64,000 nucleotides of DNA, from the NCBI GenBank assembly GCA_028826165.1, contig JAPDFW010000066.1, positions 434,001 through 498,000 of the forward strand. The letters run 5' to 3'. Source of the DNA: Anaeramoeba ignava BMAN (Eukaryota; Protista; Anaeramoebae). Below the pieces are notes generated by a model. It was not told the origin of the DNA. It ran no database searches and saw only the letters and a program-made list of their open reading frames with translations. Shown piece after piece: positions 4,781 through 63,073 of this stretch (position 1 is the stretch's first letter; each line of letters begins with the position of its first letter). Made by a program: the position numbers and the translations under genes.

Positions 4781-7507
4781 TCACCAATCTCCATCATTTC
4801 CTTGAGATTTAGATTCCAATTCAGAAATAAATTCCGACAACTCTTGATTTTTGGATTGAGCAGCAATCTCTCTAGCCTTTTCAAACCTGCCTAATCTAGC
4901 AAAGTATCTACCTCTCAAATAAAGATCAGAAATTTTGTCAACAAATTGTTCAGCTTCTTGGGGGGCAAAATTTTGGACACAAACTTGAACAAACGGTTCA
5001 TAACCGATTGGGGATTTTTTTTTTGAGAATTCTAAGAGTAAGGAGAAATGACGGGCTCTTGCAAGTGCTCTGATGACAATCCACCAGAACTTCTTCTGGG
5101 GAACTACGAACTTCTTGTATAATTTCTCAGCTTCTTTCAGGTCTTTATTTGTGACAACCTTGTCGATTGTTTGTGTAATTGTGAGCCCGATAAATTGCCC
5201 CCGATAATCACTTTCGTATTTTTTTTGCAGTTGAAGAATATCAATGTTGTCTTGAACCATTTTTGTCATAAAAGAGTCGTGGGATTGTTGGAAAGAAAGC
5301 GCGGCAATGCGCAAAGTTTGGAGTTTTTTCTGGAAAAAAGTCTCGTTTGTTGAGTAGTTGAACTCACTTGGATCGTTTTGATCTTCGATGAATCCGTTGA
5401 GATCAAGTGAGTTCTTTTTGATATCTTCTCTTGGGTCGTTTTTTGAATCGAGAAGATTGTTTGAGATTTGGGTAGAAAGATCGGAAGTGTGACGCGGACG
5501 TGTTTTCATGTTTCCGATTGCGAGAGAGTTGTCAATATTTTCGGGGTTTTCTGCAGAATTTTCGTTCTGCGCAGAAATGCGACATTCTTGGATCAGGAAA
5601 TGTTTTGAGGATTCAAGAACACAAAGAAGAGAAGCTTCATGATCAAGTCTTGAGATTTGATAAAGTATCTTGAGCTTGTCGTGGAAAGCATATGAGGATT
5701 TCCAGTATGCGACAAGAAGATTTCTTGAAAGAGGGAATTTTGAGATGTACATCAACGACTCGTTAATGGGTCTTCTGGAATCAATAAGATGGAAAATGAC
5801 GAGATAGATGAAGTCTGTTTGTCCCGATTGGATTGCTTTTTGGAGCGCAAAATCGATGTTATTCATCCTGAGAAATAACGGCACTTGATGGGCGACCTTG
5901 AACTCGTAATTAAGGAGTTCCATGGCCAAACTCTCCTTCCCTTCGCTAAGTGCTACCGCTGCAATTCGCGAGTATGAAATGGATGATTCCATCCCGATTT
6001 TGTCGAGAATTGCTTGGAGAATTTTGTCCTTTTGCTCATTGGTGCGGATCTTTTCCGCGGCCCAACGCAGAAGAACCTGATCGGTATTCATTTTGAGGGA
6101 TTTGCATATCGAGAATGCGAGGAGATGTTGATTGTGGTCCAGAAGCCGCTCGATCAGGCCTTCGATGCCGAGCAGCTTGTATTGGGGATATGTGATTGGG
6201 ATGCCGATTGTATAAGTGCGGATGTTGTTAAGAACTCGGATGATTTTGCACTTGTCGGCATAGCTGTCATGATCAAAGAAATCCAAGTAGCTTTTTGCAA
6301 AGCAAGCTGTGCGGAGAAGTTTCCGCTGGAGATCAGGTCTGAACTCATGGGCGGCGGCTTTTATACACATTTTGATCGCTTCAGAAAGCTTTCCCCGTTG
6401 AGAAATGGAACGGATAATTTCGTCCACTTTTGCAGACTTTGTCTCAAAGTTTTGGATCGCGTCAAAAAGAATAGACGCATCAGAAGCTGAACCGATTTTA
6501 AATATATCCGTCAAAGGACTGGGAACGACTGAGATGAAATCACATTTGGTTGCGGATACAACTCTTGCGCCATCAGGTTCTGGAACAAGATAAATTTTCC
6601 CGTCATAATCAAATTGCACAGACTCACCTGTAGGACCAATCATTAACAAAAGATCCACATTTTGCCAATAAGACAAAATTGAGTCTGAAGAGCACCAAAG
6701 CATCTGGGTCGGTGCCCGTGTCGCGTGGGACTGAAAATCCAGATAAAAATTCCCTAAATCACTTGTGTAAACCACAAACCTCCCCTTGTTACTCACAAGA
6801 CACACCATCTTTCCATTGCTGGAAAGCGCCATCTTCACTACATGCTCTCTCTCTGTCATCCCTACATCCCTTTCCTCATACCCGTTGCTGTCGATAACGG
6901 CAATATTCCCGTCACTTAATCCGAGCCAAACTTCGACATTTCTCGAATTTGCGAATTTTGCCTCGATCCCCATCCGGCATTTCGGTCCCTGTCGAATTTT
7001 TGGCATCTTATACTCGTTAAAAAGTGGTGTTGTCAACTCACCGAACTCATTGGTTGCAAATAAACGGAATGTTTTTGTCATTGCTATCAGTCCGTTACTG
7101 AGCAAATCCACAAACAATATTCCCTCTTCCATAAACGCTTTTGGAAGATTGAAGGTCCAAACATGCTTTCCTAGCACGCTATAAAAATCCACCGCACCAT
7201 CCTCTGTCGCGATTGCCAGTCGCCCGTTATCTGTCCATCCCATACTCAAGATACGCGATTTTTCCATCCAATCAATCTGTCCGATTAGTTTTCCGGCACT
7301 TGTGTAGATAAATACTTTTGACTTTAGCATTGACGTTTGTGCTTTTACAAACTGTGTTTCATCTCGTGCTAATGCCAATGCCCCGCCATATTGTCCCCCG
7401 CTTAATATGTAATCTTCTAGTTTTACATCCCAATCAAGTTTGTATAGTTCTTGTTGTCGATAAAAGTGATTAGAAAGAATTGTCCATTCTGTTGATATTA
7501 GTGACAT
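4781..7507 (-). CDS. VPS16: Vacuolar protein sorting 16 (HOPS/CORVET subunit), intronless
   Basis: 908-aa ORF with Vps16 motifs: W..L...FYR..ELY.L.W, YGGALAL.RD, E.DG.RV, IFKIGS, CI.AA.HEF....Q.KLL..A.F.KS, RVLN.IR...IGIPIT..QY, SPIGYEPFV..C. Confidence 0.95.
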   Translation of the reverse strand: MSLISTEWTILSNHFYRQQELYKLDWDVKLEDYILSGGQYGGALALARDETQFVKAQTSMLKSKVFIYTSAGKLIGQIDWMEKSRILSMGWTDNGRLAIATEDGAVDFYSVLGKHVWTFNLPKAFMEEGILFVDLLSNGLIAMTKTFRLFATNEFGELTTPLFNEYKMPKIRQGPKCRMGIEAKFANSRNVEVWLGLSDGNIAVIDSNGYEERDVGMTEREHVVKMALSSNGKMVCLVSNKGRFVVYTSDLGNFYLDFQSHATRAPTQMLWCSSDSILSYWQNVDLLLMIGPTGESVQFDYDGKIYLVPEPDGARVVSATKCDFISVVPSPLTDIFKIGSASDASILFDAIQNFETKSAKVDEIIRSISQRGKLSEAIKMCIKAAAHEFRPDLQRKLLRTACFAKSYLDFFDHDSYADKCKIIRVLNNIRTYTIGIPITYPQYKLLGIEGLIERLLDHNQHLLAFSICKSLKMNTDQVLLRWAAEKIRTNEQKDKILQAILDKIGMESSISYSRIAAVALSEGKESLAMELLNYEFKVAHQVPLFLRMNNIDFALQKAIQSGQTDFIYLVIFHLIDSRRPINESLMYISKFPLSRNLLVAYWKSSYAFHDKLKILYQISRLDHEASLLCVLESSKHFLIQECRISAQNENSAENPENIDNSLAIGNMKTRPRHTSDLSTQISNNLLDSKNDPREDIKKNSLDLNGFIEDQNDPSEFNYSTNETFFQKKLQTLRIAALSFQQSHDSFMTKMVQDNIDILQLQKKYESDYRGQFIGLTITQTIDKVVTNKDLKEAEKLYKKFVVPQKKFWWIVIRALARARHFSLLLEFSKKKSPIGYEPFVQVCVQNFAPQEAEQFVDKISDLYLRGRYFARLGRFEKAREIAAQSKNQELSEFISELESKSQGNDGDW

Positions 7508-41018: not shown

Positions 41019-42574
41019 ATGCATTCACCAGCACAAAATTTAATGACAAGAATACAAAAAGCATCAAACGATCACGAAATATTAATACAATGGCTTAAAA
41101 AAAGGGTTAAACTTGAAAGAACTATTGTTAAAAATATAAGTAGTCTTGCGAAAAAACAAAAGTAAAAATTTTTTCAATTTAATTTTTTCAATTAATTTTT
41201 TCAATCTAATTTTTTAATTTAAAATTTAGTAAAAAAACTCAAAATGCTTTTGATGATAATTATGATCTTTTTTTTGAAAAATTAACTCAATTAACTTCAA
41301 TTCATTCAGAAACTGAAACAACTTTACTTTCAATGATTGAACAATTAGAACATTTTCAAGATTATTTTAAAAATGAAATTTCGAAGGTTTTTTTTTTTTA
41401 TAAAATAAATTTGGATTGAAAAAAAAAAATTTTAATTAAAAAAGCAAATTATTTTGAGAAATTTTTTTTTCAAAATGGATTTAAATTAAATTAATTTGTA
41501 TTTGATTTGATTTAAAATATAGATTAATACTGAATATGTTCGTCAACAAAAAGGTTATGATAAACTTAGAGAAAGAGCATTTACTAATAATATAAAATTT
41601 CTTGAAAAAAAATTTGAATCTGAAAAATTTTATACAATTTGGAAAAGAAGAGAATCATTTGTTCATCCAAAAGAAGAACAACAAAAAGTAAAGAAAATAA
41701 AATTAAAATTCATTTATAAAATTAAAATAATTGTGTTAAAAAAAAAAAAAAGGCTTTCCAAAAATATGAATCTATAAGAGATGATTCATTTAATACTTAT
41801 CAGAAATATCGAGCAGTTTATGATAATTTTGAACAACAATATCAAGCATTTAATAACCAATGCCAAAAAACATATTTATCACTAAAACAAATTGAAATAC
41901 AAAGAAATTCATTAATTCAACAAATTTTTTTTCTTTATGCAAGTTCTTCTAAATTAATATTTCATATTGATATTAATCAATCATTTCCAACAACTCCTGA
42001 ACCTAATTTTGATTTCCAAACAAAAATTGAAACTTTATTACAAGATGAAACAACTCAACCTCCACCTATTTTAGGAATTTCCAAAGAGATTGAGTTAAAA
42101 AATGATTCTAAAATTGAATTTAAATCAGAATCAGAATCTGAAATTGAATTAAAAGTTGAATCAAAAAAAAATCCAAAACAAAAAAATAATCATAAAACAA
42201 AATAATCATAAACAAAATAGAACAAGTGTAAGTTATTTTTTATATCCTGTCTTGTTTTTTCAAAATTTCTTTATTAAAATTTAAAAATGTCTTGTTAAAA
42301 TTTAAAAATTTAGTTGAGAAGAAATTTTGGAATTGAAAAAATTAAATTTCATTTAATCAAAAAAACTAAACCAAGAAGAAAACCTCCACCAATTCCAAAA
42401 AAAAAACAATTTGCTCTTGCTTTATATGATTATGAACCTGATGATTTAACTCATTTACCTTTTAATACTGGAGATTTAATTCAAATTGTTTCTCCAACTT
42501 CAGATCCAAATTGGGTTATTGGATTATTGAATAGAAAAAAAGGATTAGTTCCAACAAATTATATTAAATATTAA
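41019..42574 (+). CDS. F-BAR (FCH) + SH3 domain protein, multi-exon; probable homopolymer frameshift near 42195
   Basis: N-terminal WLKKRVKLEENYCKNISSLAKK (FCH motif), helical middle, PPPIPK, and C-terminal SH3 ALYDY...L.F..GD.I......NW..G....KGLVP.NY. Confidence 0.8.
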
Positions 42575-42723: not shown

Positions 42724-45700
42724 ATGGAAATTGAAGAAAGAAATCAAGTTTATAAAAGACAATTTATTGAATTTTTAAGAATTGAAGTAAAAATCAAATT
42801 AAATTAAAAAATCAAATTAAAAATCAAATTAAAAATTTAAATTAATTTAGAATAATGATAAAAGAATTGATCAAATGATTGATCAAAAAATGCAAAGAAC
42901 AATTATTAATGCAAATGATTTAAGAAATTTTGATCCAAAATTATGTTCCGAGTTTGTTTTATTTTTTTATAAATTCAAAATTTTTAAAATTCATTTTAAA
43001 TTCCTTTTAGATTTATAAATCATCCAGCTGATTATTTACAAGCTTTTAATGATGCATTAACTGAAATTGTTAATGATAAATTTCCCAATTATGCAAACAC
43101 TTTTGATTATGAAAATTTTTTTATTGGAATAGAAGGAAATCTTGGAGAAATACATCACACAAGTCCGCGCCAACTCAAATCATCGCTTCTCGGGAAACTT
43201 GTTTGTATAAATGGAATAGTGAATAAATGTAATTTTGAAAGAAAAAAAACAAAATCGAAATTGTTCGACTTTTATTTAAGTTAAATGGAATTTTTTTGTT
43301 TACAAGGTTCTATTGTGAGACCGAAGGTTGTTCAAAGCGTTCACTATTGTAAAGTGACTACCAAGACGATGGCGAGAGTGTACCGCGATGAGACCTCAAT
43401 CGATGGACTTCCCACTGGGTTTATGTATCCGACTACTGATGATGAGGGAAATGCGCTTGTGACAGAATATGGGCTCAGCAAATATAAAGATTACCAACGG
43501 TTGACAATTCAAGAAACCCCAGAAACTTTGCCTACAGGTCAGCTACCGAGATCTATTGAGATTATTTTGGAAAACGATCTTGTTGATTCTGTCAAACCTG
43601 GTGATCGAGCCAAAATTTATGGTATTTTTCGTGCACTTGCTGGAAAGGCGACAGGTCTTGTTTCGGATGTTTTTCCGACAGTTGTGCTCGCTAATAATGT
43701 GAGTAAGGATGACAAAGGCACGCTTCCTAAGCAGCTGACTGACCAAGATGTTTCTTCTATCAGAGAATTTTCAAAAAGAAAAGACTTGTTTGAAGTCTTA
43801 ACAAATTCCATTGCTCCGTCAATTTATGGCCATGAAATGCTAAAGAAGAGTCTTCTTCTTATGCTTCTTGGAGGGGTTGAGCGAGTCTTGGCTAATAAAG
43901 CGCACTTGAGAGGGGATATAAACATATTGATGATTGGAGACCCTTCAACAGCAAAATGTTTTTTGAAAAACACTCCAATTGTTCGTTTTGACGGCACGAT
44001 TTGCAGTGTTCAAGATGTCTCTGCAGGCGATGTTTTGATGGGCGATGATCTGCAAAAACGCGTTGTGCAAGTCACTACTTCTGGTCACTCAATGATGTAC
44101 CGTGTTGTCCCTAAATTGGGCGATTCTTTTATTGTTAATGGAGATCATTTGTTATCAATTAAAGTGGAAAAAAGTGGAACAAAAAATAACGGACTAAATG
44201 GAGATTTTTATTCAAAAAATTCTTTTTTTCAAACTGAGATTTCTGTTGATTCTTTTCTTAGGCTTCCTCGATATTTGCAACAAAAATGCAGATTGTTTCG
44301 GAAATCAGTTGAATATCCTGAAAAAATTGTTGATTTTGATCCTTTTTTGATTGGATTTTGGATTGGAAATTGCAGTTTGGATTCCTTTGTGTCTTTCAAG
44401 GATTTTTGTTCAAAATTTGTTGGGAAATCAGTTGGTTGTTTATCAGAAGAAAAGCTTTTGGATCTTGATTTGGAAATGGAAGAAAAAAGACATATTCCTG
44501 AAAAATATTTAATCAATAATAGCAAAATTAGGGAACGTTTACTTCTTGGGCTTTTTTCTTCAAGAATTGGATCAATTCAAGAAGAAGATTCAATTGGATT
44601 GTTTTCTTTTGTTATTCCGAATTTGGAAAGAAATCAAAAATTAGTTTCAGATATTTTGTATCTTTCCCGTTCACTTGGATTTTGTTGTGAAAAAGTTGAT
44701 TTCAAAGAAAGAATAGAAGTTATTGTTTATGGATCAAAACAAGAAGAAAGCAAAAAAATGATTGAAAAGGGAGAATTTATTAACTTAGCAAAAGCAAATG
44801 AAGATTTTTTGATGACAAGTTTTGAGGTTGAAAAATATGGATATGATGATTATTATGGGTTTTCAGTTGATGGGAATCATAGATTTTTATTGGGTGATTT
44901 TACAGTTGCTCATAATTCTCAGTTGTGTCGGTTTATTTTGAATATTGCGCCTTTAGCGATTAGCACTACAGGAAGAGGGTCTACTGGAGTTGGTAACTTT
45001 TCATATAAATTTATATTTAAAATTTTGATTTATATTTGATTTATATTTGATTTGATTTAAATTTGATTTAAATTTTGATTTAATATTTTATTTAAATTTT
45101 GATTTAATATTTGATTTAATATTTGATTTTAATATTTGATTTTAATATTTGATTTAAATTTTGATTTAATATTTGATTTATATTTGATTTTATTTTTATA
45201 TTTAATTTAATATTTGATTTAATATTTAATTTTATATTTGATTTATATTAATTTAATATTTGATTTATATTTGATTTATATTTGATTTAATATTGATTTA
45301 TATTTGATTTAATATTTGATTTAAAATTTGATTTATATTTAAAATTTTATTTTATATTTGATTTATATTTGATTTATTTTGATTTAAATTTATTTTAATA
45401 TTTGATTTAATATTTGATTTAAAATTTGATTTATATTTGATTTATATTTGATTTATATTTAATTTAAAATTGATTTAAAATTTGATTTAAATTTTGATTT
45501 AATATTATATTTAATATTTTATATTTGATTTGATGTAAAGGTTTAACGGCGGCAGTTACAACCGATCCAGAAACCCGAGAAAAAAGATTAGAAGCAGGAG
45601 CAATGGTATTAGCAGATCGAGGAATTGTTATAATTGATGAATTTGACAAAATGTCATTTTTGGATCGAATCGCAATTCACGAAGCAATGGAACAACAAAC

Positions 45701-46883
45701 AGTAACAATTTCAAAAGCAGGAATACACACAAGTCTTAACGCAAGATGCTCTGTAATTGCAGCAGCAAATCCAATTTATGGACAGTATGATCGAACTAAA
45801 AAACCATCAGAAAATATTGCACTTCCTGATTCGTTACTTTCCCGTTTTGATCTCCTTTTTATTGTTCTTGATAATATTGATCCTGAATCAGATCGCCTCA
45901 TTTCTAATCATGTCCTTAAAATGCATATGTGGCAAAATGATGTCGCAAATGACCCTAATTTTTCAAATACTCAAGATGAAAAAGATGATCAAGATTTTGA
46001 CATTTTTTTAAATAGAAATCCTTTTGAAGAAATGACTAAAAAATGGCAGAAAAAAAAAAGCCAGAAAAATAAAAGGTATCAAACAAGGAAAAGTTCGCAA
46101 AGAAACAGCAAATCGGAAAGCAAAAGCCAAAATGATGATGATGAGAATTTTGAACAAAAAAAAATTCTTAATATTGATTTTTTGAAAAAATACATTTACT
46201 TTGCTAAACAAAAGATTGTTCCAAAAATGACCAATGAAGCATCCGAATTTATTGCATCATTTTGGGTTGGCTTAAGAAGTAAGGAAGGAATAAAAACACA
46301 GCCCATTACAGCAAGAACTTTGGAAACACTTATTCGTTTATCAACTGCTCATGCAAAAGCAAGACTCAGTGATATCGTGACTGAAGAAGATGCAAAAGGA
46401 GCAAGTGATATTATTAATTTTGCATTGTTTCATGAAGCTGAACCAAAGAAGGCTGAAGTTAAAAGAAAGAAACGACGAGAACCTGTTCAAATTGAAAATG
46501 AAAATGAAAATGAAATCAAAATCAAAATTGAAAATGAAAATGAAAATGAAAATGAAAATGAAAATGAAAATCAAAATCAAAATGAAATTCAAATCGAAAA
46601 TGAAAATAATTCAAATGCGATTGAAATGGATCAAGAAATTGATTCGCAAACAAAACCTAATTTATCTAAAACAAAAGATCGTTTAGTTGAATTTAGAAAA
46701 TTAATTGCAAATGTTTTCAAGAAAAAACGAACAAATGAAATGCAAATTGAAATTTTAATTCAAGAAATTAATGAAACAAAACCAAATCCATTATATGATT
46801 TTGAAGAAATTGAACCATATTTACATCAACTTCAAGAAGAGAATAGGTTAATGTTTAGTGAAGGAGTTGTGTTTTTAATTTAA
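42724..46883 (+). CDS. MCM3: DNA replication licensing factor MCM3 (5 exons, intein-containing)
   Basis: [116 protein letters not shown]. Last intron is 44993-45540. Confidence 0.97.
43957..44916 (+). mobile_element. Intein (320 aa) with degenerate LAGLIDADG homing endonuclease, in the MCM3 Walker A motif
   Basis: In-frame insert between GDPSTAK and SQL. Block A CFLKNTPI, block [10 protein letters not shown], blocks [25 protein letters not shown], +1 Ser. Endonuclease remnants: [37 protein letters not shown]. Confidence 0.96.
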
Positions 46884-47064: not shown

Positions 47065-50000
47065 TTAATTTTCAATTGAAAAAATATTGAAAGATTTAAT
47101 AAGATATTTTGTTTCACTTGAAAGATCCAAAAATTCTTCAAGAGTTAAATAACCTTTCTTTGAAGAATCAAAATGTTCGAACATTTTCTCAATTTGAACT
47201 AACAAATCTTTGTTTTCCATATTAAAATATTCAGCAAAAATTTTCCAAATTGATTGAGGAGTAACTTTTCCATCTCCTTCAGAATCAAAAATTGAGAAAC
47301 CAAAAGCCATTTTATCAACAAAAGATCCATGAAATAAACAATAAAGACCAATGAATAATTCTCTGAAGTTTAATTGACCGTTTTTTGATTTATTGAAACC
47401 CAAAAAGAGGATTTGAATTTGTTTTCTGTTTGTAATTCCAATTTTACCAAAAAAATCAACTAAGTTTTCATAAGTCATATATTTTTTTGGATAATCATCA
47501 CAAAATCTTTGGAACATTAAATTCAGTTCAATTTCTCTAAAAGAACAAAGTCTTTTTAAAATCTTGATGTCTTGTTTATCTAGTTTTTCAAATTGCATTT
47601 CCATTCCATCTGCAACTGTAATTGATCCATGAAGTGTTTTAATCCATTCTAAATAATCTGTGTGACTTTCTGCAAAGAAAAGCATGTGTTTTCCCTCTGT
47701 TGATCCTATTTCGAAACTTAGTGGTTTTTTCGTTATTGAGTTTGCTGGTTTTAGTTGTGCTCCTTTGAGTGGGATTGAGTGTTGTGCTTTTTGGGAGAGA
47801 TCTTTTTATATTTAAATTTATATAAATTTTTAAAATTTATAAATGAATTTTTAAATAAATTTTTAAATAAATTTTAATTTTAATTTTAATTTTAATTTTT
47901 AAATAAATTTTAATTTTGATATTAATTTTCATTTTAATTTAAATTTAAATTTTAATTTTATAAATGAATTTTAATTTTAATTTTAATTTTAATTTTTAAA
48001 TAAATTTTAATTTTGATAATTTTCATTAATTTAAATTTTAATTTTTAATTTTTTAATTTTAATTTTAATTTTAATTATAATTATAATTTTAATTTTAATT
48101 TTAAATTTAATTTTAATTTTTAAATTTTAATTATAATTATAAATTATAATTTTATTATTAATTTTAATTTTAAATTTAAAATTTTAATTTTAATTTTAAT
48201 TTTAATTTCATAAATGAATTTTAATTTTAAATTTAAATTTTAATTTTATAATTGAATTTTAATTTTAATTTTAATTTTAATTTTAAATTTAATTTTAATT
48301 TTAATTTTAATTTTAATTTTAATTTTATTTTAATTTTGATTTTATTATTAATTTTAATTTTAATTTTAATTTTAATTTTAATTTTAATTTTAATTTCATA
48401 AATGAATTTTAATTTTAATTATAATTATGATTTTAATTTTATAAATGAATTTTAATTATTTTTATACCAGGAATAGCATCAGGATTTTCAGGATTCATTT
48501 TATAATAATCCAAATGATCAGAACGAATAATAAAAAACTTTTTCTTCCATTGTTTTTTTGAATCTGAAGGAAGACAAGATAAAAATCCTTGTTTGTTTAA
48601 ATTGCTTGAAAGACGCAAAAAATAATAGAAACTTTGAATAGCACTTTTCATATTATTAACCCAAGAAATTTGCTCTTCTTTTGTATCACATTCAATTAAA
48701 TATTCAGAATCAGTTGATTGTTTTAAAATGATAGTAAAAGGCTGAGCAGCAAGATCAAGATCTGCTATTATTATTGATTTTGATATTAAAATAAACCCTT
48801 TTGGTTCTGTTATTGATTTTGCTGCTCGTGAGTAAAATAAATATATTCCATTCAATAGAAACCAATATCTTTTTCTTTTCATTTTGTTCGATGATATCCA
48901 TAAATATCCATCAAAAAATATATTTGTAAATGATTGTAGATGTCTTGTTTGTTTCTTTTGAGTTGGTTGGACTTGTTCTAATTTTAATATTAAATTCAAA
49001 AAGAATTTTGATTTAAATTTTATAAATGAATTTTTTATAAATGAATTTTAATTTTAATTTTAATTTTAATTTTAATTTTAATTTTAATTTTAATTTTATA
49101 AATGAATTTTAATTTTAATTTTAATTTTAATTTTAATTTTAATTTTAATTTTAATTTTAATTTTAATTTTCAATTTAATTTTAATTTTATTTTTAATTTT
49201 AATTTTAATTTTAATTTTAATTTTAATTTTTATAAATGAATTTTAATTTTAATTTTTAATTTTAATTTTAATTTTAATTTTTTAATTTTAAATTTTAAAT
49301 TTTATTTTTTAAATAAATGAATTTTAATTTTAATTTTAATTTTAATTTTAATTTTAATTTTAATTTTGATTTAAAATTTTATAAATGAATTTTAATTTAA
49401 ATTTTAATTTTAATTTTATAAATGAATTTTAAATTTTAATTTTAATTTTATAAATGAATTTTATAAATGAATTTAAATTTTAATTTTAATTTTTATAAAA
49501 TTTAAATTTTTTAAATTTTAATTTTAATTTTAATTTTATAAATGAATTTTAAATTTAATTTTATAAATGAATTTTAATTTTAATTTTAAATTTAATTTTA
49601 TAAATGAATTTTAAATTTAATTTTAATTTTAATTTTATAAATGAATTTTAATTTTATATAATTTTATATAATTTTATATAATTTTAAATTATATATGTAT
49701 ATGTACCAATTTGAGAATCATTTGCAGAGACAATATCTTGATTTTGTTGGTTATTCTCAAGATCAATATCGTTTGATTGCTCTAGAGGAGAACGAAGAGG
49801 AGATTCATCTTGACCCTTTTCAATTTCATGGATATTCAAATTTCTTCTTCCTTGAACAGGAGAAGGAGAAGAATCAGCATAAAAAGAAGCCATAAGTTTT
49901 CTATTGAGCCTGTTCTTATGTTCCTTTGTACATTTCTGTGCGTAAAAATCGATATTTTGGAACCAAGAGTTAAGCAACTGATTAAACATTTCTTTTTCCT

Positions 50001-50652
50001 TTTCAAATTTCTCAAGTTTAGTTTGCTGGCCTTTTTGGGATTCCTCTTTGGGAAGGATCGGAAGTAAAACAATAGAGTTTCTTGTGGGATGATTCAGACG
50101 AATAACGGGCGTGTCTTGGTTATTATTGAACTCAATCTTAGCTTGAAGATTATTAAGAAAAATAACGCCCAATGGAAATTCAATTTTCTGTTCATTTTGA
50201 TAGTAAGTGATGATATTATCATATAAATGGAAATGGAAGTCTTTCCATCGCCTGAAGCGCTGGCCTTCTTTCTTAAGATTGCCTGTTAAATGTGGCTTTC
50301 GATCTTGATATTTGCGTTCGGGAGTTAAAAGTAAAATGGATTTTGTAATTGCGTCCATCCATTCTTCTCGCAGCTGCGGTGAGCTCGCCTGAATGAAGAA
50401 GTCCCGCGACTCCTCTTGCACTATTTGGAAACTATTCTTGTATGACGCCTTGAATACATACCCCCCGTCTAGTGAAATTGCTCCCAGTGGGTGGTTAGTG
50501 TTTTGGTTCTTATAATATACTAATGTGTGGTTGCTTTTTAATACAAACCACCGTTTTTTCCATGTTTTGTGCTTCCCCCCTTGCTTCGTTAGATTCCCGC
50601 TCTTGATGATTTCGTTGTCCGTTACGTTTTTCTCGTCTTTTTGATCGCTCAT
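47065..50652 (-). CDS. Four-PH-domain protein with C-terminal NCS/calcineurin-B-like EF-hand domain (exons 50652-49707, 48977-48468, 47801-47065; 730 aa)
   Basis: Exons sum to 2193 nt in frame. PH motifs: KSGNLTKQGGKHKTWKKRWFVL, GNLKKEGQRFRRWK, DGYLW......KRYWFLL, KQGFL.......WKKKFFII. EF-hand motifs: FNKSKNGQLNFRE, FDSEGDGKVT, FDSSKKGYLTLEEF. Confidence 0.85.
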
Positions 50653-55684: not shown

Positions 55685-58600
55685 TTAAAAATCGGATTTA
55701 ATTGATTCATCTAAATCATCGGAATCATTTAGTAAATCGTCATCTGTATTATTTAATAATTCTTCAATTAATTCCTTTTCATCATTTCTTTTTCGTTTTC
55801 TTTTTTGTAACAAAACAATAACCACAATCAAAGAAATTATAAAAACAGGAACAATAACGCTGATTGTAATGATAACTGTTTTTGAATTTGAAGTTGAAGG
55901 TTCGTTTTGAGTCCAAATCAAAGTTTCTGCAGGATTTCCACATTGATAATGCATATCACATGCTGAAACATTGATATAATACTCTTCATTTGCAAGATTT
56001 GCTGTTATTTTTTCATTTGTTGATGTTAAATTAATTGAATTCAAATCTTGATTATTTTGTGATTGATAAGTGAAATTATAAAAGGAAGGAGAAAGTGTTC
56101 CATTTGGTTTATCCCATGAACATATAATTTCATAAATATCTGCTACTGAACAACTTAAATTATTAACTGGCCCAAATATTAATGTATCAATTGTTGTATT
56201 TGAAATATCTCCACATATACCATTTATATCACAAGCTGAAACATTAATATAATATTCTTCATTTGAATGATTCGCTGTTATTGTTTCATTTGTTATTGCT
56301 AAATTAAACGAACCATTATCTTCTCCATTTTGTGATTGATAACTGAAATTATAAAAGGAAGGAATAAGTGTTCCATTTGGTTCATCCCATGAGCAACTAA
56401 TTGTAAATGAATCTGATATTGAACAACTTAAATTATTAACTTTTTCAAATATTAATGTATTAATTGTTATATTTGAAATATCTCCACATATACCATTTAT
56501 ATCACAAGCTGAAACATTAATATAATATTCTTCATTTGAATAATTTGCTGTTATTGTTTCATTTGTTATTGCTAAATTAAACGAACCATTATCTTCTCCA
56601 TTTTGTGATTGATAACTGAAATTATAAAAGGAAGGAATAAGTGTTCCATTTGGTTTATCCCATAAACAAATAATTGTAAATGAATCTGATATTGAACAAC
56701 TTAAATTATTAACTTTTTCAAATATTAATGTATTAATTGTTATATTTGAAATATCTCCACATATACCATTTATATCACAAGCTGAAACATAGATATAATA
56801 TTCTTCATTTGAATAATTTGCTGTTATTGTTTCATTTGTTATTGCTAAATTAAATGAACCAATATCTTCTCCATTTTGTGATTGATAAGTGAAATTATAA
56901 AATGAAGGAATAAGTGTTCCATTTGGTTCATCCCATGAGCAACTAATTGTAAATGAATCTGATATTGAACAACTTAAATTATTAACTTTTTCAAATATTG
57001 TTGTAGTAATCATCTTTGTTGAAACATCTCCACATATACCATTTATATCACAGGCTGAAACATAGATATAATATTCTTCATTTGAATAATTTGCTGTTAT
57101 TGTTTCATTTGTTATTGCTAAATTAAATGAACCAATATCTTCTCCATTTTGTGATTGATAACTGAAATTATAAAAGGAAGGAATAAGTGTTCCATTTGGT
57201 TTATCCCATAAACATATAATTGTAAATGAATCTGATATTGAACAATTTAAATGATTAACTTTTTCAAATATTGTTGTATTAATTGTTATATTTGAAACAT
57301 TTCCACATATACCATTTATATCACAAGCTGAAACATAGATATAATATTCTTCATTTGAATAAATTGCTGTTGTATTCCCATTTGGTAAAGTAAAATTAAA
57401 TGAACCAATATCTTCTCCATTTTGTGATTGATAAGTGAAATTATAAAAGGAAGGAGAAAGTGTTCCATTTGGTTTATCCCATGAACAAATAATTGTAAAT
57501 GAATCTGATATTGAACAATTTAAATGATTAACTTGTTCAAATATTGTTGTATTAACTACTACATTTGAAACATCCCCACATTTATTGTTTATATCACAAG
57601 CTGAAACATAGATATAATATTCTTCATTTGAATAATTTGCTGTTATTGTTTCATTTGTTATTGTTGATATTAAATTAAACGAACCATTATCTTCTCCATT
57701 TTGTGATTGATAAGTGAAATTATAAAATGAAGGAATAAGTGTTCCATTTGGTTTATCCCATAAACATATAATTGTAAATGAATCTGATATTGAACAACTT
57801 AAATTAACTTGTCCAAATATTGATGTAGTAATTATTATGTTTGAAACATCTCCACATTTATTGTTTATATCACAAGCTGAAACATTAATTTGATATTCTT
57901 CATTTGAATAATTTGCTGTTATTGTTTCATTTGTTATTGTTGATATTAAATTAAACGAACCATTATCTTCTCCATTTTGTGATTGATAACTGAAATTATA
58001 AAAGGAAGGAGAAAGTGTTCCATTTGGTTTATTCCATGAACAACTAATTGTAAATGAATCAGATATTGAGCAACTTAAATTATTAACTTTTTCAAATATT
58101 GTTGTATTAATCATCTTTGTTGAAATATCCCCACATATACCATTTATATCACAGGCTGAAACATAGATATAATATTCTTCATTTGAATAATTTGCTGTTA
58201 TTGTTTCATTTGTTATTGTTGATGCTAAAATAAATACACCATTATCTTCTCCATTTTGTGATTGATAAGTAAAATTATAAAAGGAAGGAGAAAGTGTTCC
58301 ATCTGGTTCATCCCATGAACATATAATTGTAAATGAATCTGATATTGAACAATTTAAATTATTAACTGGTCCAAATATCGATGTAGTAGCTGTCGTTGTT
58401 GAAATATCTCCACATATACCATTTATATCACATGCTGAAACATTAATTTGATATTCTTCATTTGAGTAATTTGCTGTTATTGTTTCACTTGTTGATGTTA
58501 AATTAAACGAACCATTATCTTCTCCATTTTGTGATTGATAAGTGAAATTATAAAAGGAAGGAATAAGTGTTCCATTTGGTTTATCCCATGAACATATAAT

Positions 58601-61600
58601 TGTAAATGAATCTGATATTGGACAATTTAAATGATTAACTTTTTCAAATATTGTTGTAGTAATTGTTGTATTTGAAATATTTCCACATATACCATTTATA
58701 TCACAAGCTGAAACATAGATATAATATTCTTCATTTGAATAATTTGCTGTTGTATTCCCATTTGGTAAAGTAAAATTAAGTGAACCATTATCTTCTCCAT
58801 TTTGTGATTGATAAGTAAAATTATAAAATGAAGGAATAAGTGTTCCATTTGGTTTATCCCATAAACAAATAATTGTAAATGAATCTGATATTGAACAATT
58901 TAAATTATTAACTTTTTCAAATATTGTTGTAGTAATTGTTGTATTTGAAACATTTCCACATATACCATTTATATCACAAGCTGAAACATAGATATAATAT
59001 TCTTCATTTGAATAATTTGCTGTTGTATTCCCATTTGTTAAAGTAAAATTAAGTGAACCATTATCTTCTCCATTTTGTGATTGATAACTGAAATTATAAA
59101 ATGAAGGAATAAGTGTTCCATTTGGTTCATCCCATGAACATATAATTGTAAATGAATCTGATATTGAACAATTTAAATTATTAACTTGTTCAAATATTGT
59201 TGTAGTAACTGTTGTATTTGAAACATTTCCACATATACCATTTATATCACAAGCTGAAACATAGATATAATATTCTTCATTTGAATAAATTGCTGTTGTA
59301 TTCCCATTTGGTAAAGTAAAATTAAGTGAACCATTATCTTCTCCATTTTGTGATTGATAAGTAAAATTATAAAATGAAGGAATAAGTGTTCCATTTGGTT
59401 TATCCCATGAACATATAATTGTAAATGAATCTGATATTGAACAATTTAAATTATTAACTTTTTCAAATATTGTTGTAGTAACTATCTTTGTTGAAATATC
59501 TCCACAATGGTTGTTTATATCACAAGCTGAAACATTAATTTGATATTCTTCATTTGAATAATTTGCTGTTATTGTTTCATTTGTTGATGTTAAATTAAAA
59601 GAACCATTATCTTCTCCATTTTGTGATTGATAACTGAAGCTATAAAATGAAGGAATAAGTGTTCCATCTGGTTTATCCCATGAGCAACTAATTGTAAATG
59701 AATCAGATATTGAACAACTTAAATTAACTGGTCCAAATATTGATGTAGTAACTATCTTTGTTGAAATATCTCCACATATACCATTTATATCACAGGCTGA
59801 AACATTAATTTGATATTCTTCATTTGAATAGTTTGCTGTTATTGTTTCATTTGTTGATGTTAAATTAAAAGAACCATTATCTTCTCCATTTTGTGATTGA
59901 TAACTGAAGCTATAAAATGAAGGAATAAGTGTTCCATTTGGTTTATCCCATGAACAACTAATTGTAAATGAATCAGATATTGAACAACTTAAATTAACTT
60001 GTTCAAATATTGTTGTAGTAACTGTTGTATTTGAAACATTTCCACATATACCATTTATATCACAAGCTGAAACATAGATATAATATTCTTCATTTGAATA
60101 GTTTGCTGTTATTGTTTCATTTGTTGATGTTAAATTAAAAGAACCATTATCTTCTCCATTTTGTGATTGATAACTGAAATTATAAAATGAAGGAATAAGT
60201 GTTCCATTTGGTTTATCCCATGAACAACTAATTGTAAATGAATCTGATATTGAACAATTTAAATTATTAACTTGTCCAAATATTGTTGTAGTAACTGTTG
60301 TATTTGAAACATTTCCACATATACCATTTATATCACAAGCTGAAACATAGATATAATATTCTTCATTTGAATAGTTTGCTGTTATTGTTTCATTTGTTAT
60401 TGTTAAATTAAACGAACCAATATCTTCTCCATTTTGTGATTGATAAGTGAAATTATAAAATGAAGGAATAAGTGTTCCATTTGGTTCATCCCATAAACAA
60501 ATAATTGTAAATGAATCTGATATTGAACAACTTAAATTAACTTCTCCAAATATTGTTGTAGTAACTGTTGTATTTGAAACATTTCCACATATACCATTTA
60601 TATCACAAGCTGAAACATAGATATAATATTCTTGATCTGAATAATTTGCTGTTATTGTTTCATTTGTTATTGTTAAATTAAGTGAACCAATATCTTCTCC
60701 ATTTTGTGATTGATAAGTGAAATTATAAAATGAAGGAATAAGTGTTCCATTTGGTTTATCCCATAAACAAATAATTGTAAATGAATCAGATATTGAACAA
60801 CTTAAATTAACTTCTCCAAATATTGTTGTATTAATTGTTGTATTTGAAACATTTCCACATATACCATTTATATCACAAGCTGAAACATAGATATAATATT
60901 CTTGATCTGAATAATTTGCTGTTATAGTTTCATTTGTTATTGTTAAATTAAATGAACCAATATCTTCTCCATTTTGTGATTGATAAGTGAAATTATAAAA
61001 TGAAGGAATAAGTGTTCCATTTGGTTCATTCCATGAACATATAATTGTAAATGAATCTGATATTGAACAATTTAAATTATTAACTTGTCCAAATATTGTT
61101 GTATTAACTATTTTATTTGAAATATCTCCACATATACCATTTATATCACAAGCTGAAACATATATATAATATTCTTGATCTGAATAATTTGCTGTTATTG
61201 TTTCATTTGTTATTGTTAAATTAAGTGAACCAATATCTTCTCCATTTTGTGATTGATAAGTAAAATTATAAGATGAAGGAGAAAGTGTTCCATTTGGTTC
61301 ATCCCATAAACAAATAATTGTAAATGAATCTGATATTGAACAACTTAAATTATTAACTTGTTCAAATATTAATGTATTAACTGTTGTATTTGAAATATCT
61401 CCACATATACCATTTATATCACAAGCTGAAACATAGATATAATATTCTTCATTTGAATAATTTGCTGTTATTGTTTCATTTGTTATTGTTAAATTAAGTG
61501 AACCAATATCTTCTCCATTTTGTGATTGATAAGTAAAATTATAAGATGAAGGAATAAGTGTTCCATTTGGTTCATCCCATAAACAAATAATTGTAAATGA

Positions 61601-63073
61601 ATCTGATATTGAACAATTTAAATTATTAACTTGTCCAAATATTAATGTATTAACTGTTGTATTTGAAACATCTCCACATATACCATTTATATCACAAGCT
61701 GAAACATAGATATAATATTCTTCATTTGAATAATTTGCTGTTATTGTTTCATTTGTTATTGTTAAATTAAGTGAACCAATATCTTCTCCATTTTGTGATT
61801 GATAACTGAAATTATAAAATGAAGGAGAAAGTGTTCCATTTGGTTCATCCCATGAGCAAATAATTGTAAATGAATCTGATATTGAACAACTTAAATTAAC
61901 TTGTCCAAATATTGTTGTATTTGAAATTGTGGAAACTTCTCCTTTAGAATCTCCTTGGCATTCAGATGTTTGACAAGCCCATATTGAAATTGAATAATTG
62001 CTCCCCGAATTTAAATTACTCAAGTTGTATGAAGTAGATGAATTGTTAATAGTAGCATCTCCCACTTCTTCTTCCATATTTAAAGAATAAGAAATAGCAT
62101 AATGATCAAGTTTTGGAACACCTTCAATGATTGGAACATTTGGATAATTCCATGAAATATCAATAGATGTTGATGATAATGTTATTGCTGATAAATTTTT
62201 TACTGAATCAATTCTAGTTGTTAAATTGACTTCATTTGTAGAATTCCCACATTGATCCTCTGCATCGCAAGCTATTATTTGAATTGTGTAATTTTCATTC
62301 CCAGAAATATTTGGATAATTCGAAGAATCAAAAATTTGATAAAGAGTATTGTCTTGTACTTCCGGATTTTGAATTATATTCCAATCTCCGTTATAATTGA
62401 TCTTATATGTGATATTGTCTTGAGAAACGTTATACCAATAACATTCAAAAGAAGAAAACAAAGTTGTACAGTTGATAATAGTAACATTATCTGGAGTTAC
62501 TTGTTCATGAAAGTTGAGGTAATTTTGAAGATTTGAAAATGGGATTTTGGATTCTATCCAATTTTTTCCGTTGAATTTAAACAAATAGACTGAATTTTGA
62601 TTTGAATTTAGATTTGAATTTTGATTTGAATTTTGATTTGAATTTAGATTTGAATTTTGATTTGAATTTTGATTTGAATTTATCCCCTTTGTTTGAACTA
62701 GCAAAATATCATCTTCTAAAATTGAACAACTTGAGCCAAAATAACCATTTGCAATTCCATCACTTGCAATAAGTGTTGCTTCTTTATTCCAATTTGATCC
62801 TTCCTTTCGATAAACATAAACTTTTCCTTGGTTTTTATTGTTTCCAATTGAAGCTTCAGGAAATCCTATAAGAATTAAATTTTTTGAAACACTAATTTCC
62901 TTGCCACATTTTTCTTGATAATTTTTTTGATTAAAATCTTTTGGAATGCATTCAATTTTGTGGAAATTTGTTTTTGCTTTCTGTTTTTCTGTGATTTGGT
63001 AAGTTTTGCTATTGAAAATTGTTATTGATAAAGAAAGGAAAATTAAAATAAAAAATAGTTTGTTTTGTTTCAT
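55685..63073 (-). CDS. Giant type-I membrane protein: signal peptide, partial FG-GAP-like head, 2 divergent + 22 near-identical FN3-like repeats, TM helix, short acidic tail; intronless
   Basis: 2462-aa ORF. Hydrophobic N-terminus; GKVYVY / LIASDG....YFGSS blades; 22 units of about 91 aa (C.ISDSFTI.C.WD.P...Y...VSACD..G.CG); TM VIITISVIVPVFIISLIVVIVLL followed by KRKRKR. Confidence 0.9.
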   Translation of the reverse strand: MKQNKLFFILIFLSLSITIFNSKTYQITEKQKAKTNFHKIECIPKDFNQKNYQEKCGKEISVSKNLILIGFPEASIGNNKNQGKVYVYRKEGSNWNKEATLIASDGIANGYFGSSCSILEDDILLVQTKGINSNQNSNQNSNLNSNQNSNQNSNLNSNQNSVYLFKFNGKNWIESKIPFSNLQNYLNFHEQVTPDNVTIINCTTLFSSFECYWYNVSQDNITYKINYNGDWNIIQNPEVQDNTLYQIFDSSNYPNISGNENYTIQIIACDAEDQCGNSTNEVNLTTRIDSVKNLSAITLSSTSIDISWNYPNVPIIEGVPKLDHYAISYSLNMEEEVGDATINNSSTSYNLSNLNSGSNYSISIWACQTSECQGDSKGEVSTISNTTIFGQVNLSCSISDSFTIICSWDEPNGTLSPSFYNFSYQSQNGEDIGSLNLTITNETITANYSNEEYYIYVSACDINGICGDVSNTTVNTLIFGQVNNLNCSISDSFTIICLWDEPNGTLIPSSYNFTYQSQNGEDIGSLNLTITNETITANYSNEEYYIYVSACDINGICGDISNTTVNTLIFEQVNNLSCSISDSFTIICLWDEPNGTLSPSSYNFTYQSQNGEDIGSLNLTITNETITANYSDQEYYIYVSACDINGICGDISNKIVNTTIFGQVNNLNCSISDSFTIICSWNEPNGTLIPSFYNFTYQSQNGEDIGSFNLTITNETITANYSDQEYYIYVSACDINGICGNVSNTTINTTIFGEVNLSCSISDSFTIICLWDKPNGTLIPSFYNFTYQSQNGEDIGSLNLTITNETITANYSDQEYYIYVSACDINGICGNVSNTTVTTTIFGEVNLSCSISDSFTIICLWDEPNGTLIPSFYNFTYQSQNGEDIGSFNLTITNETITANYSNEEYYIYVSACDINGICGNVSNTTVTTTIFGQVNNLNCSISDSFTISCSWDKPNGTLIPSFYNFSYQSQNGEDNGSFNLTSTNETITANYSNEEYYIYVSACDINGICGNVSNTTVTTTIFEQVNLSCSISDSFTISCSWDKPNGTLIPSFYSFSYQSQNGEDNGSFNLTSTNETITANYSNEEYQINVSACDINGICGDISTKIVTTSIFGPVNLSCSISDSFTISCSWDKPDGTLIPSFYSFSYQSQNGEDNGSFNLTSTNETITANYSNEEYQINVSACDINNHCGDISTKIVTTTIFEKVNNLNCSISDSFTIICSWDKPNGTLIPSFYNFTYQSQNGEDNGSLNFTLPNGNTTAIYSNEEYYIYVSACDINGICGNVSNTTVTTTIFEQVNNLNCSISDSFTIICSWDEPNGTLIPSFYNFSYQSQNGEDNGSLNFTLTNGNTTANYSNEEYYIYVSACDINGICGNVSNTTITTTIFEKVNNLNCSISDSFTIICLWDKPNGTLIPSFYNFTYQSQNGEDNGSLNFTLPNGNTTANYSNEEYYIYVSACDINGICGNISNTTITTTIFEKVNHLNCPISDSFTIICSWDKPNGTLIPSFYNFTYQSQNGEDNGSFNLTSTSETITANYSNEEYQINVSACDINGICGDISTTTATTSIFGPVNNLNCSISDSFTIICSWDEPDGTLSPSFYNFTYQSQNGEDNGVFILASTITNETITANYSNEEYYIYVSACDINGICGDISTKMINTTIFEKVNNLSCSISDSFTISCSWNKPNGTLSPSFYNFSYQSQNGEDNGSFNLISTITNETITANYSNEEYQINVSACDINNKCGDVSNIIITTSIFGQVNLSCSISDSFTIICLWDKPNGTLIPSFYNFTYQSQNGEDNGSFNLISTITNETITANYSNEEYYIYVSACDINNKCGDVSNVVVNTTIFEQVNHLNCSISDSFTIICSWDKPNGTLSPSFYNFTYQSQNGEDIGSFNFTLPNGNTTAIYSNEEYYIYVSACDINGICGNVSNITINTTIFEKVNHLNCSISDSFTIICLWDKPNGTLIPSFYNFSYQSQNGEDIGSFNLAITNETITANYSNEEYYIYVSACDINGICGDVSTKMITTTIFEKVNNLSCSISDSFTISCSWDEPNGTLIPSFYNFTYQSQNGEDIGSFNLAITNETITANYSNEEYYIYVSACDINGICGDISNITINTLIFEKVNNLSCSISDSFTIICLWDKPNGTLIPSFYNFSYQSQNGEDNGSFNLAITNETITANYSNEEYYINVSACDINGICGDISNITINTLIFEKVNNLSCSISDSFTISCSWDEPNGTLIPSFYNFSYQSQNGEDNGSFNLAITNETITANHSNEEYYINVSACDINGICGDISNTTIDTLIFGPVNNLSCSVADIYEIICSWDKPNGTLSPSFYNFTYQSQNNQDLNSINLTSTNEKITANLANEEYYINVSACDMHYQCGNPAETLIWTQNEPSTSNSKTVIITISVIVPVFIISLIVVIVLLQKRKRKRNDEKELIEELLNNTDDDLLNDSDDLDESIKSDF

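What the first reader, a model, noticed from the sequence alone, without database searches (positions are those of the whole stretch)
43957..44916. Intein in the Walker A motif of a eukaryotic nuclear MCM3
Seen: a 320-aa in-frame insert splits GDPSTAK|SQL and has all class-1 splicing residues (Cys1, block-B NxxH, terminal His-Asn, Ser+1). Established: this post-lysine P-loop position is a classic intein site in archaeal MCM/CDC21, whereas eukaryotic nuclear inteins are rare (VMA1, PRP8, some RNA polymerases). Anaeramoeba genomes have been reported as intein-rich, so this may already be catalogued. The [19 protein letters not shown] end resembles eukaryote/giant-virus-type inteins. Inference: an essential helicase subunit depends on protein splicing, and the site may have been invaded independently of the archaeal alleles. 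The intein sits in an exon 25 codons upstream of a spliceosomal intron.
Basis: partly seen in the sequence, partly recalled or inferred. Interest (0 to 1): 0.85.

Follow-up and report, generated by a model that had tools for sequence, protein, structure and literature searches.

The report
Known intein in Anaeramoeba MCM3 helicase
The only MCM3 replication-helicase gene of the amoeba Anaeramoeba ignava carries a real self-splicing protein insert in its ATP-binding loop; the genome's inteins were published in 2023, and the small addition here is that this insert belongs to a virus/yeast-type family rather than to the archaeal family known from the same spot.

Summary
In detail: window 43957-44916 is a 320-aa in-frame intein (Cys1, NxxH, His-Asn, Ser+1) after the Walker A lysine of the single MCM3 gene. 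A spliced transcript contig removes the introns but keeps the insert, and the predicted fold matches yeast PI-SceI and Prp8 inteins. Protein splicing is therefore the likely route to active MCM3; it is inferred, not shown. Both endonuclease catalytic aspartates are lost, so it probably cannot home.

The genome is Anaeramoeba ignava BMAN, surveyed by Gallot-Lavallee et al. 2023 (103 inteins; MCM3-9 in their Fig. 5C). It is very likely catalogued, though I could not read their dataset.

The intein shows no similarity to archaeal MCM-a alleles and belongs to a large VMA/Prp8/virus-type family that mostly sits after P-loop lysines (115 of 137 relatives). In the same genome MCM6, 8 and 9 carry this family at site a, while MCM4 carries the archaeal type. 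The donor is unresolved. The scan has already noted other inteins of this genome on other DNA.

The parts
42724..42786 (+). MCM3 exon 1 (inferred start; intron 1 = 42787-42850, GT..AG)
   Evidence: Frame and phase arithmetic. The transcript contig starts at 42851, so this exon is not itself confirmed.
42851..42951 (+). MCM3 exon 2
   Evidence: Transcript contig; joint 42951-43011 skips 59 nt, GT..AG
43011..43228 (+). MCM3 exon 3
   Evidence: Transcript contig; joint 43228-43307 skips 78 nt, GT..AG
43307..44992 (+). MCM3 exon 4: OB domain, start of the AAA+ domain, the whole intein and 25 codons of C-extein
   Evidence: Pfam MCM_OB and MCM; one contig covers 43307-44994 without gaps
43936..43956 (+). 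Walker A motif up to the lysine (GDPSTAK); end of the N-extein; insertion site MCM-a
   Evidence: site definition in PMC10643990
43957..44916 (+). 320-aa class-1 intein, Hom_end_hint (VMA/Prp8/virus-type) family
43957..43959 (+). Cys1, block A nucleophile
   Evidence: 100% conserved in the family alignment
44137..44148 (+). Block B NxxH (N61, H64)
   Evidence: N 96%, H 100% in relatives; yeast VMA1 intein also has Asn here (PMC6805012)
44341..44376 (+). Degenerate LAGLIDADG motif 1; catalytic Asp replaced by Asn138
   Evidence: Asp in 68% of relatives
44539..44571 (+). Degenerate LAGLIDADG motif 2; Asp replaced by Ser201
   Evidence: Asp in 95% of relatives; Pfam Hom_end below cut-off
44848..44916 (+). 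Blocks F and G, ending His319-Asn320
44917..44919 (+). Ser+1, the C-extein nucleophile and the Walker A Ser
44993..45540 (+). Intron 4 (548 nt, GT..AG, phase 1), 10 nt downstream of the empty MCM-b site
   Evidence: the transcript continues from here into exon 5 sequence (loose end); site b located in MCM5/6/7
45541..46883 (+). MCM3 exon 5: Walker B, arginine finger, lid and MCM3-type winged helix
   Evidence: Pfam MCM, MCM_lid, WH_MCM3_C; PDB hits

Best explanation
The gene is transcribed and RNA-spliced to an mRNA for a precursor of about 1136 aa that still contains the intein (shown for introns 2-4 and the intein; exon 1 inferred). The Hint domain then splices itself out by the standard class-1 route: Cys1 N-S acyl shift helped by block-B Asn/His, transfer to Ser+1, Asn320 cyclisation helped by His319, then O-N shift. 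This rejoins Lys and Ser of the Walker A motif in a mature MCM3 of about 816 aa (inferred from residues, fold and necessity). The endonuclease domain is a folded but catalytically dead remnant, so the element persists because only exact removal is tolerated. It entered site MCM-a from a promiscuous, P-loop-preferring VMA/Prp8/virus-type family, not from the archaeal MCM-a alleles. It is very likely one of the 103 inteins already catalogued for A. ignava BMAN.
For: All splicing residues are present and conserved. Model pLDDT is 87.6, with Foldseek hits PI-SceI E 6e-21 and Prp8 intein at TM 0.93 by target, rmsd 1.9. The insert is kept in a spliced transcript contig. There is a single MCM3. Both LAGLIDADG acids are lost. 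No hit to 9 archaeal MCM-a inteins at E<=10, to PDB CDC21 inteins 6rpq/6rpp at E<=1 (against 58, 59), or in 142 archaeal genomes. There are 7012 relatives, the best at 30-44% identity; 115 of 137 extracted follow GK; their contexts look like giant-virus and phage DNA. Genome identity. Paper.
Against: Splicing of this intein was not observed. The paper's text names MCM3 inteins only for A. flamelloides, and its Dataset S1 and Fig. 5C could not be read. The archaeal sample is small-genome lineages plus two CDC21 structures, with no haloarchaeal allele compared directly. Trees do not resolve a donor. RNA evidence is one run, contigs only.
Confidence: 0.88

Rival explanations
1. It is an old allelic MCM-a intein of archaeal descent that diverged beyond recognition, as the paper suggests for some singleton MCM inteins.
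For: Same site as archaeal MCM-a; long end branch of 1.2-1.5; the paper argues this for A. flamelloides MCM3/MCM5.
Against: It is not a singleton. It scores 160-173 bits with non-MCM P-loop inteins and nothing with archaeal MCM-a, whereas the MCM4-a intein of the same genome does match them, best E 4e-22. The Pfam families differ: Hom_end_hint against Intein_splicing.
Confidence: 0.04
2. The intein is domesticated as a conditional (redox or oxygen) switch that gates replication licensing in this anaerobe.
For: Essential active-site position; several cysteines in the insert; conditional splicing is known elsewhere (cited in PMC10710043; metal and oxidation inhibition of a Prp8 intein in PMC6805012).
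Against: No data. The endonuclease decay, fast divergence and dozens of similar inserts in unrelated ATPases of the same genome fit neutral parasitism. No other MCM3 with such an insert was found among the best hits.
Confidence: 0.06
3. The insert is an intron, an assembly artefact, or sits in a non-functional MCM3 copy.
For: The assembly has imperfect duplicates: a second MCM4 copy is about 96% identical and changes frame.
Against: No GT..AG ends; open frame; retained in a transcript contig with 0 differences; no second MCM3.
Confidence: 0.02

Closest known systems
Anaeramoeba inteins of Gallot-Lavallee et al. 2023 (PMC10710043), probably their network cluster 15
   Same: Same genome (BMAN); MCM3-9 inteins and nearby introns are the subject of their Fig. 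5C; cluster 15 spans 24 BMAN proteins plus viral proteins, like this family here.
   Different: The cluster assignment is my inference. The main text stresses P-loop homing for class-3 cluster 1, not for this class-1 family, and does not name the BMAN MCM3 intein.
Sce VMA1 intein (PI-SceI) and fungal Prp8-a inteins
   Same: Best sequence and fold matches; Cys1, NxxH or TxxH, Gly-Phe/Ile block F, His-Asn; Hint plus LAGLIDADG layout as in PI-SceI.
   Different: Only 15-19% structural identity; shorter than PI-SceI (320 against 454 aa); endonuclease acids lost; different host and site.
Archaeal MCM-a / CDC21-a inteins (CDC21 inteins PDB 6rpq, 6rpp)
   Same: Identical insertion point after the Walker A lysine; class 1.
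   Different: Different sequence lineage with no detectable similarity; about 460-540 aa in the nine sampled. In this genome that lineage is in MCM4, not MCM3.
P-loop inteins of giant-virus-like contigs and phage helicases
   Same: 30-44% identity over the whole length; same K|C...HN|S/T junction.
   Different: None of the 160 hosts examined is an MCM; most keep the catalytic aspartates.

Membership tests
Class-1 cis-splicing intein | In-frame insert absent from homologs | tested here: met
Class-1 cis-splicing intein | Cys/Ser1, block-B His, terminal His-Asn, Cys/Ser/Thr+1 | tested here: met
   C1, H64, H319, N320, S+1
Class-1 cis-splicing intein | Hint fold | tested here: met
   Pfam PF05203 above cut-off; model and Foldseek
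Class-1 cis-splicing intein | Retained in mature mRNA | tested here: met
   (one run, contigs)
Class-1 cis-splicing intein | Excision with extein ligation | not testable with these tools
   needs a reporter assay or a junction peptide
Active LAGLIDADG homing-endonuclease intein | Acidic catalytic residue in both LAGLIDADG motifs | tested here: not met
   N138 and S201 replace Asp
Archaeal MCM-a/CDC21-a allele | Insertion after the Walker A lysine of an MCM | tested here: met
Archaeal MCM-a/CDC21-a allele | Sequence similarity to other MCM-a alleles | tested here: not met
Catalogued A. ignava BMAN inteins (2023 survey) | Lies in the surveyed genome | tested here: met
   NCBI KAJ5078626.1 (A. 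ignava) is on a 675,903-nt contig, the length of G000:C46; three inteins each in MCM6 and MCM8, with 185- and 160-aa members as published
Catalogued A. ignava BMAN inteins (2023 survey) | Listed in Dataset S1 / Fig. 5C | not testable with these tools
   supplements not held; figures are not held
Eukaryotic MCM3 | Best hits MCM3; MCM3-type winged helix; other paralogs present separately | tested here: met

The most novel reading that the evidence does not exclude
Site MCM-a in one eukaryotic genome was colonised by two unrelated intein lineages: archaeal-type in MCM4, and virus/VMA-type in MCM3, 6, 8 and 9. The latter is a very large family that targets the lysine codon of P-loops in unrelated NTPases regardless of DNA sequence, and this has not been spelled out in print.
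Probability: 0.3. Interest if true: 0.45.

Novelty: already known. Interest (0 to 1): 0.25.

Why it matters
An essential subunit of the eukaryotic replicative helicase that must splice itself is unusual among eukaryotes, but that is the published message of the 2023 Anaeramoeba paper. The useful addition is a clean within-genome exception to the allelic rule: the same MCM site holds inteins of two origins. This offers a test of how non-allelic homing into P-loops works.

Tried and rejected
NCBIfam gave no intein hit. A search for close kin found none: the best are 30-44% identical. Trees were unresolved, the careful run did not finish, and AU tests neither show nor reject one clade for the four site-a inteins (p 0.89) or for all A. 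ignava rows (p 0.96). Raised GC3 in the N-extein (0.36 against 0.17-0.20) suggested a co-conversion tract; I dropped this because other genes in the window reach 0.37-0.43. One search had off-by-one exon limits, corrected. The joined spliced protein was not searched; exons were searched one by one, by reference.

Full report
Observation. The stretch 43957-44916 (+) reads as 320 codons from Cys to His-Asn with no stop, between GDPSTAK and SQL. Of the 120 best homologs of this exon, all MCM-family and MCM3 where named, 119 have these flanks joined. Pfam Hom_end_hint matches at E 9e-17. The insert is real and far beyond chance.

Host gene. Five exons run from 42724 to 46883 with GT..AG introns and consistent phases, giving a 1136-aa precursor and 816 aa without the insert. 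PDB hits and the MCM3-type winged helix identify MCM3. The assembly holds MCM2 and MCM4-9 elsewhere and no second MCM3 (paralog names are my reading of their motifs). I checked the model by coordinates and searched it exon by exon; the joined protein was not searched.

RNA. The one public run that holds the stretch is unlabelled, but its 2885-nt contig skips introns 2 and 3, runs on into exon 5 at intron 4, and covers 43307-44994 with no gap or difference. It is therefore spliced RNA that keeps the insert. This is one study and contigs only, so rare variants would not show. Exon 1 is not covered.

Anatomy. In an alignment of 150 relatives, C1, H64, G301, H319 and N320 are invariant. Block B has Asn in place of Thr, as in 96% of the family and in the yeast VMA1 intein (PMC6805012). 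The model is confident (pLDDT 87.6) and matches PI-SceI and the Prp8 inteins best. Both catalytic aspartates are replaced (N138, S201; Asp in 68% and 95% of relatives), so homing activity is unlikely. None of the 18 copies of this family that I extracted from the genome has an acid aligned at motif 1.

Mechanism. Shown: transcription, intron removal, retention of the insert, residues and fold. Inferred from established intein chemistry: class-1 splicing that restores the Walker A Lys-Ser bond. Inferred: an unspliced 320-aa block in the P-loop of the only MCM3 would not support helicase function, so splicing is needed. Nothing here supports regulation.

Source genome. A relative from the protein search is NCBI KAJ5078626.1, named an intein-containing pachytene checkpoint protein precursor of Anaeramoeba ignava, on a contig of 675,903 nt, the length of this assembly's contig 46. 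MCM6 and MCM8 each hold three inteins, including ones of 185 and 160 aa, the features that PMC10710043 reports for strain BMAN. That paper surveyed the proteome by BLAST and HMM, found 103 inteins, and devotes Fig. 5C to MCM3-9 and to introns near insertion sites. An intein this easy to detect would hardly be missed, but the text names MCM3 inteins only for A. flamelloides and I could not read the dataset. I put the chance that it is catalogued at about 0.9.

Origin. The position is archaeal site MCM-a (PMC10643990; PMC4760082), but the sequence is not of that lineage. It does not hit nine archaeal MCM-a inteins that I extracted, the CDC21 intein structures that those alleles hit first, or anything in 142 archaeal genomes. 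The MCM4 site-a intein of the same genome does hit them and falls in a different Pfam family, which makes it a good positive control. The MCM3 intein instead has 7012 relatives, the best at 30-44% identity. None of the 160 hosts examined is an MCM, and 115 of 137 extracted copies follow a GK, mostly in P-loops of helicases, AAA+ proteins, Lon and packaging ATPases (one of the 137 is A. ignava's own). Sampled contexts look like giant-virus or phage DNA by gene content, and named phage helicases carry it. In this genome 16 of 18 extracted copies follow a P-loop lysine, including MCM6, 8 and 9; one splits the DK|TGT motif of a P-type ATPase; one has an untraced upstream flank. This fits the paper's cluster 15, by inference. 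Trees cannot tell spread between paralogs from repeated invasion.

The intron. Intron 4 begins 76 nt after the intein and 10 nt after the empty site b, which is filled in MCM5, 6 and 7. It fits the paper's intron-near-empty-site pattern and probably has nothing to do with the site-a intein.

Verdict. A real class-1 intein with a dead endonuclease, probably functional in splicing, in a genome whose inteins are published. Earlier notes of this scan reached the same species call on other DNA; I established it separately.

Noticed in passing
L055:3240-4418:- (G000:C2, MCM4): A 393-aa site-a intein of the archaeal CDC21 type, unrelated to the site-a inteins of MCM3, 6, 8 and 9 in the same genome.
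   Followed up: partly
L059 (MCM9), L060 (MCM8), L058 (MCM7): Introns sit at site a. In MCM9 a 317-nt intron lies exactly between the Walker A Lys and intein Cys1; in MCM8 one lies in the Gly codon just before that Lys, with the intein present; in MCM7 a 177-nt intron is exactly at the empty site. Intron and intein are not mutually exclusive here.
   Followed up: partly
L055 and L056 (G000:C2 and C17): Two MCM4 copies about 96% identical. The C17 copy changes frame shortly after the intein, so it is probably a haplotig or an assembly error.
   Followed up: no
P0164, P0165: The A. flamelloides MCM6 intein sits at the position of the second intein of A. ignava MCM8, not at any of the three A. 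ignava MCM6 sites.
   Followed up: no
P0023, P0024, P0081, P0090 and others: Several outside ATPases carry two inteins of this family back to back, or three residues apart, within one P-loop.
   Followed up: no
L001-L030, L054-L063: None of the 18 extracted genome copies of this family has an acid aligned at LAGLIDADG motif 1, so the family may be wholly immobile in this strain (alignment-dependent).
   Followed up: partly
L064: A 2.7-kb contig in a Clostridia MAG matches the MCM3 N-extein at 61% identity; probably eukaryotic contamination of that genome.
   Followed up: no
window 55685-63073 (-): A 2462-aa ORF with a signal-like N-terminus, many near-identical repeats of about 90 aa and a C-terminal membrane-like segment; it looks like a surface protein.
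   Followed up: no
window 4781-7507, 42314-42574, 47065-47685, 49684-50652: Ordinary neighbours: Vps16, an SH3 protein, an EF-hand protein and a PH-domain protein. GC3 varies widely between genes, from 0.07 to 0.43.
   Followed up: partly
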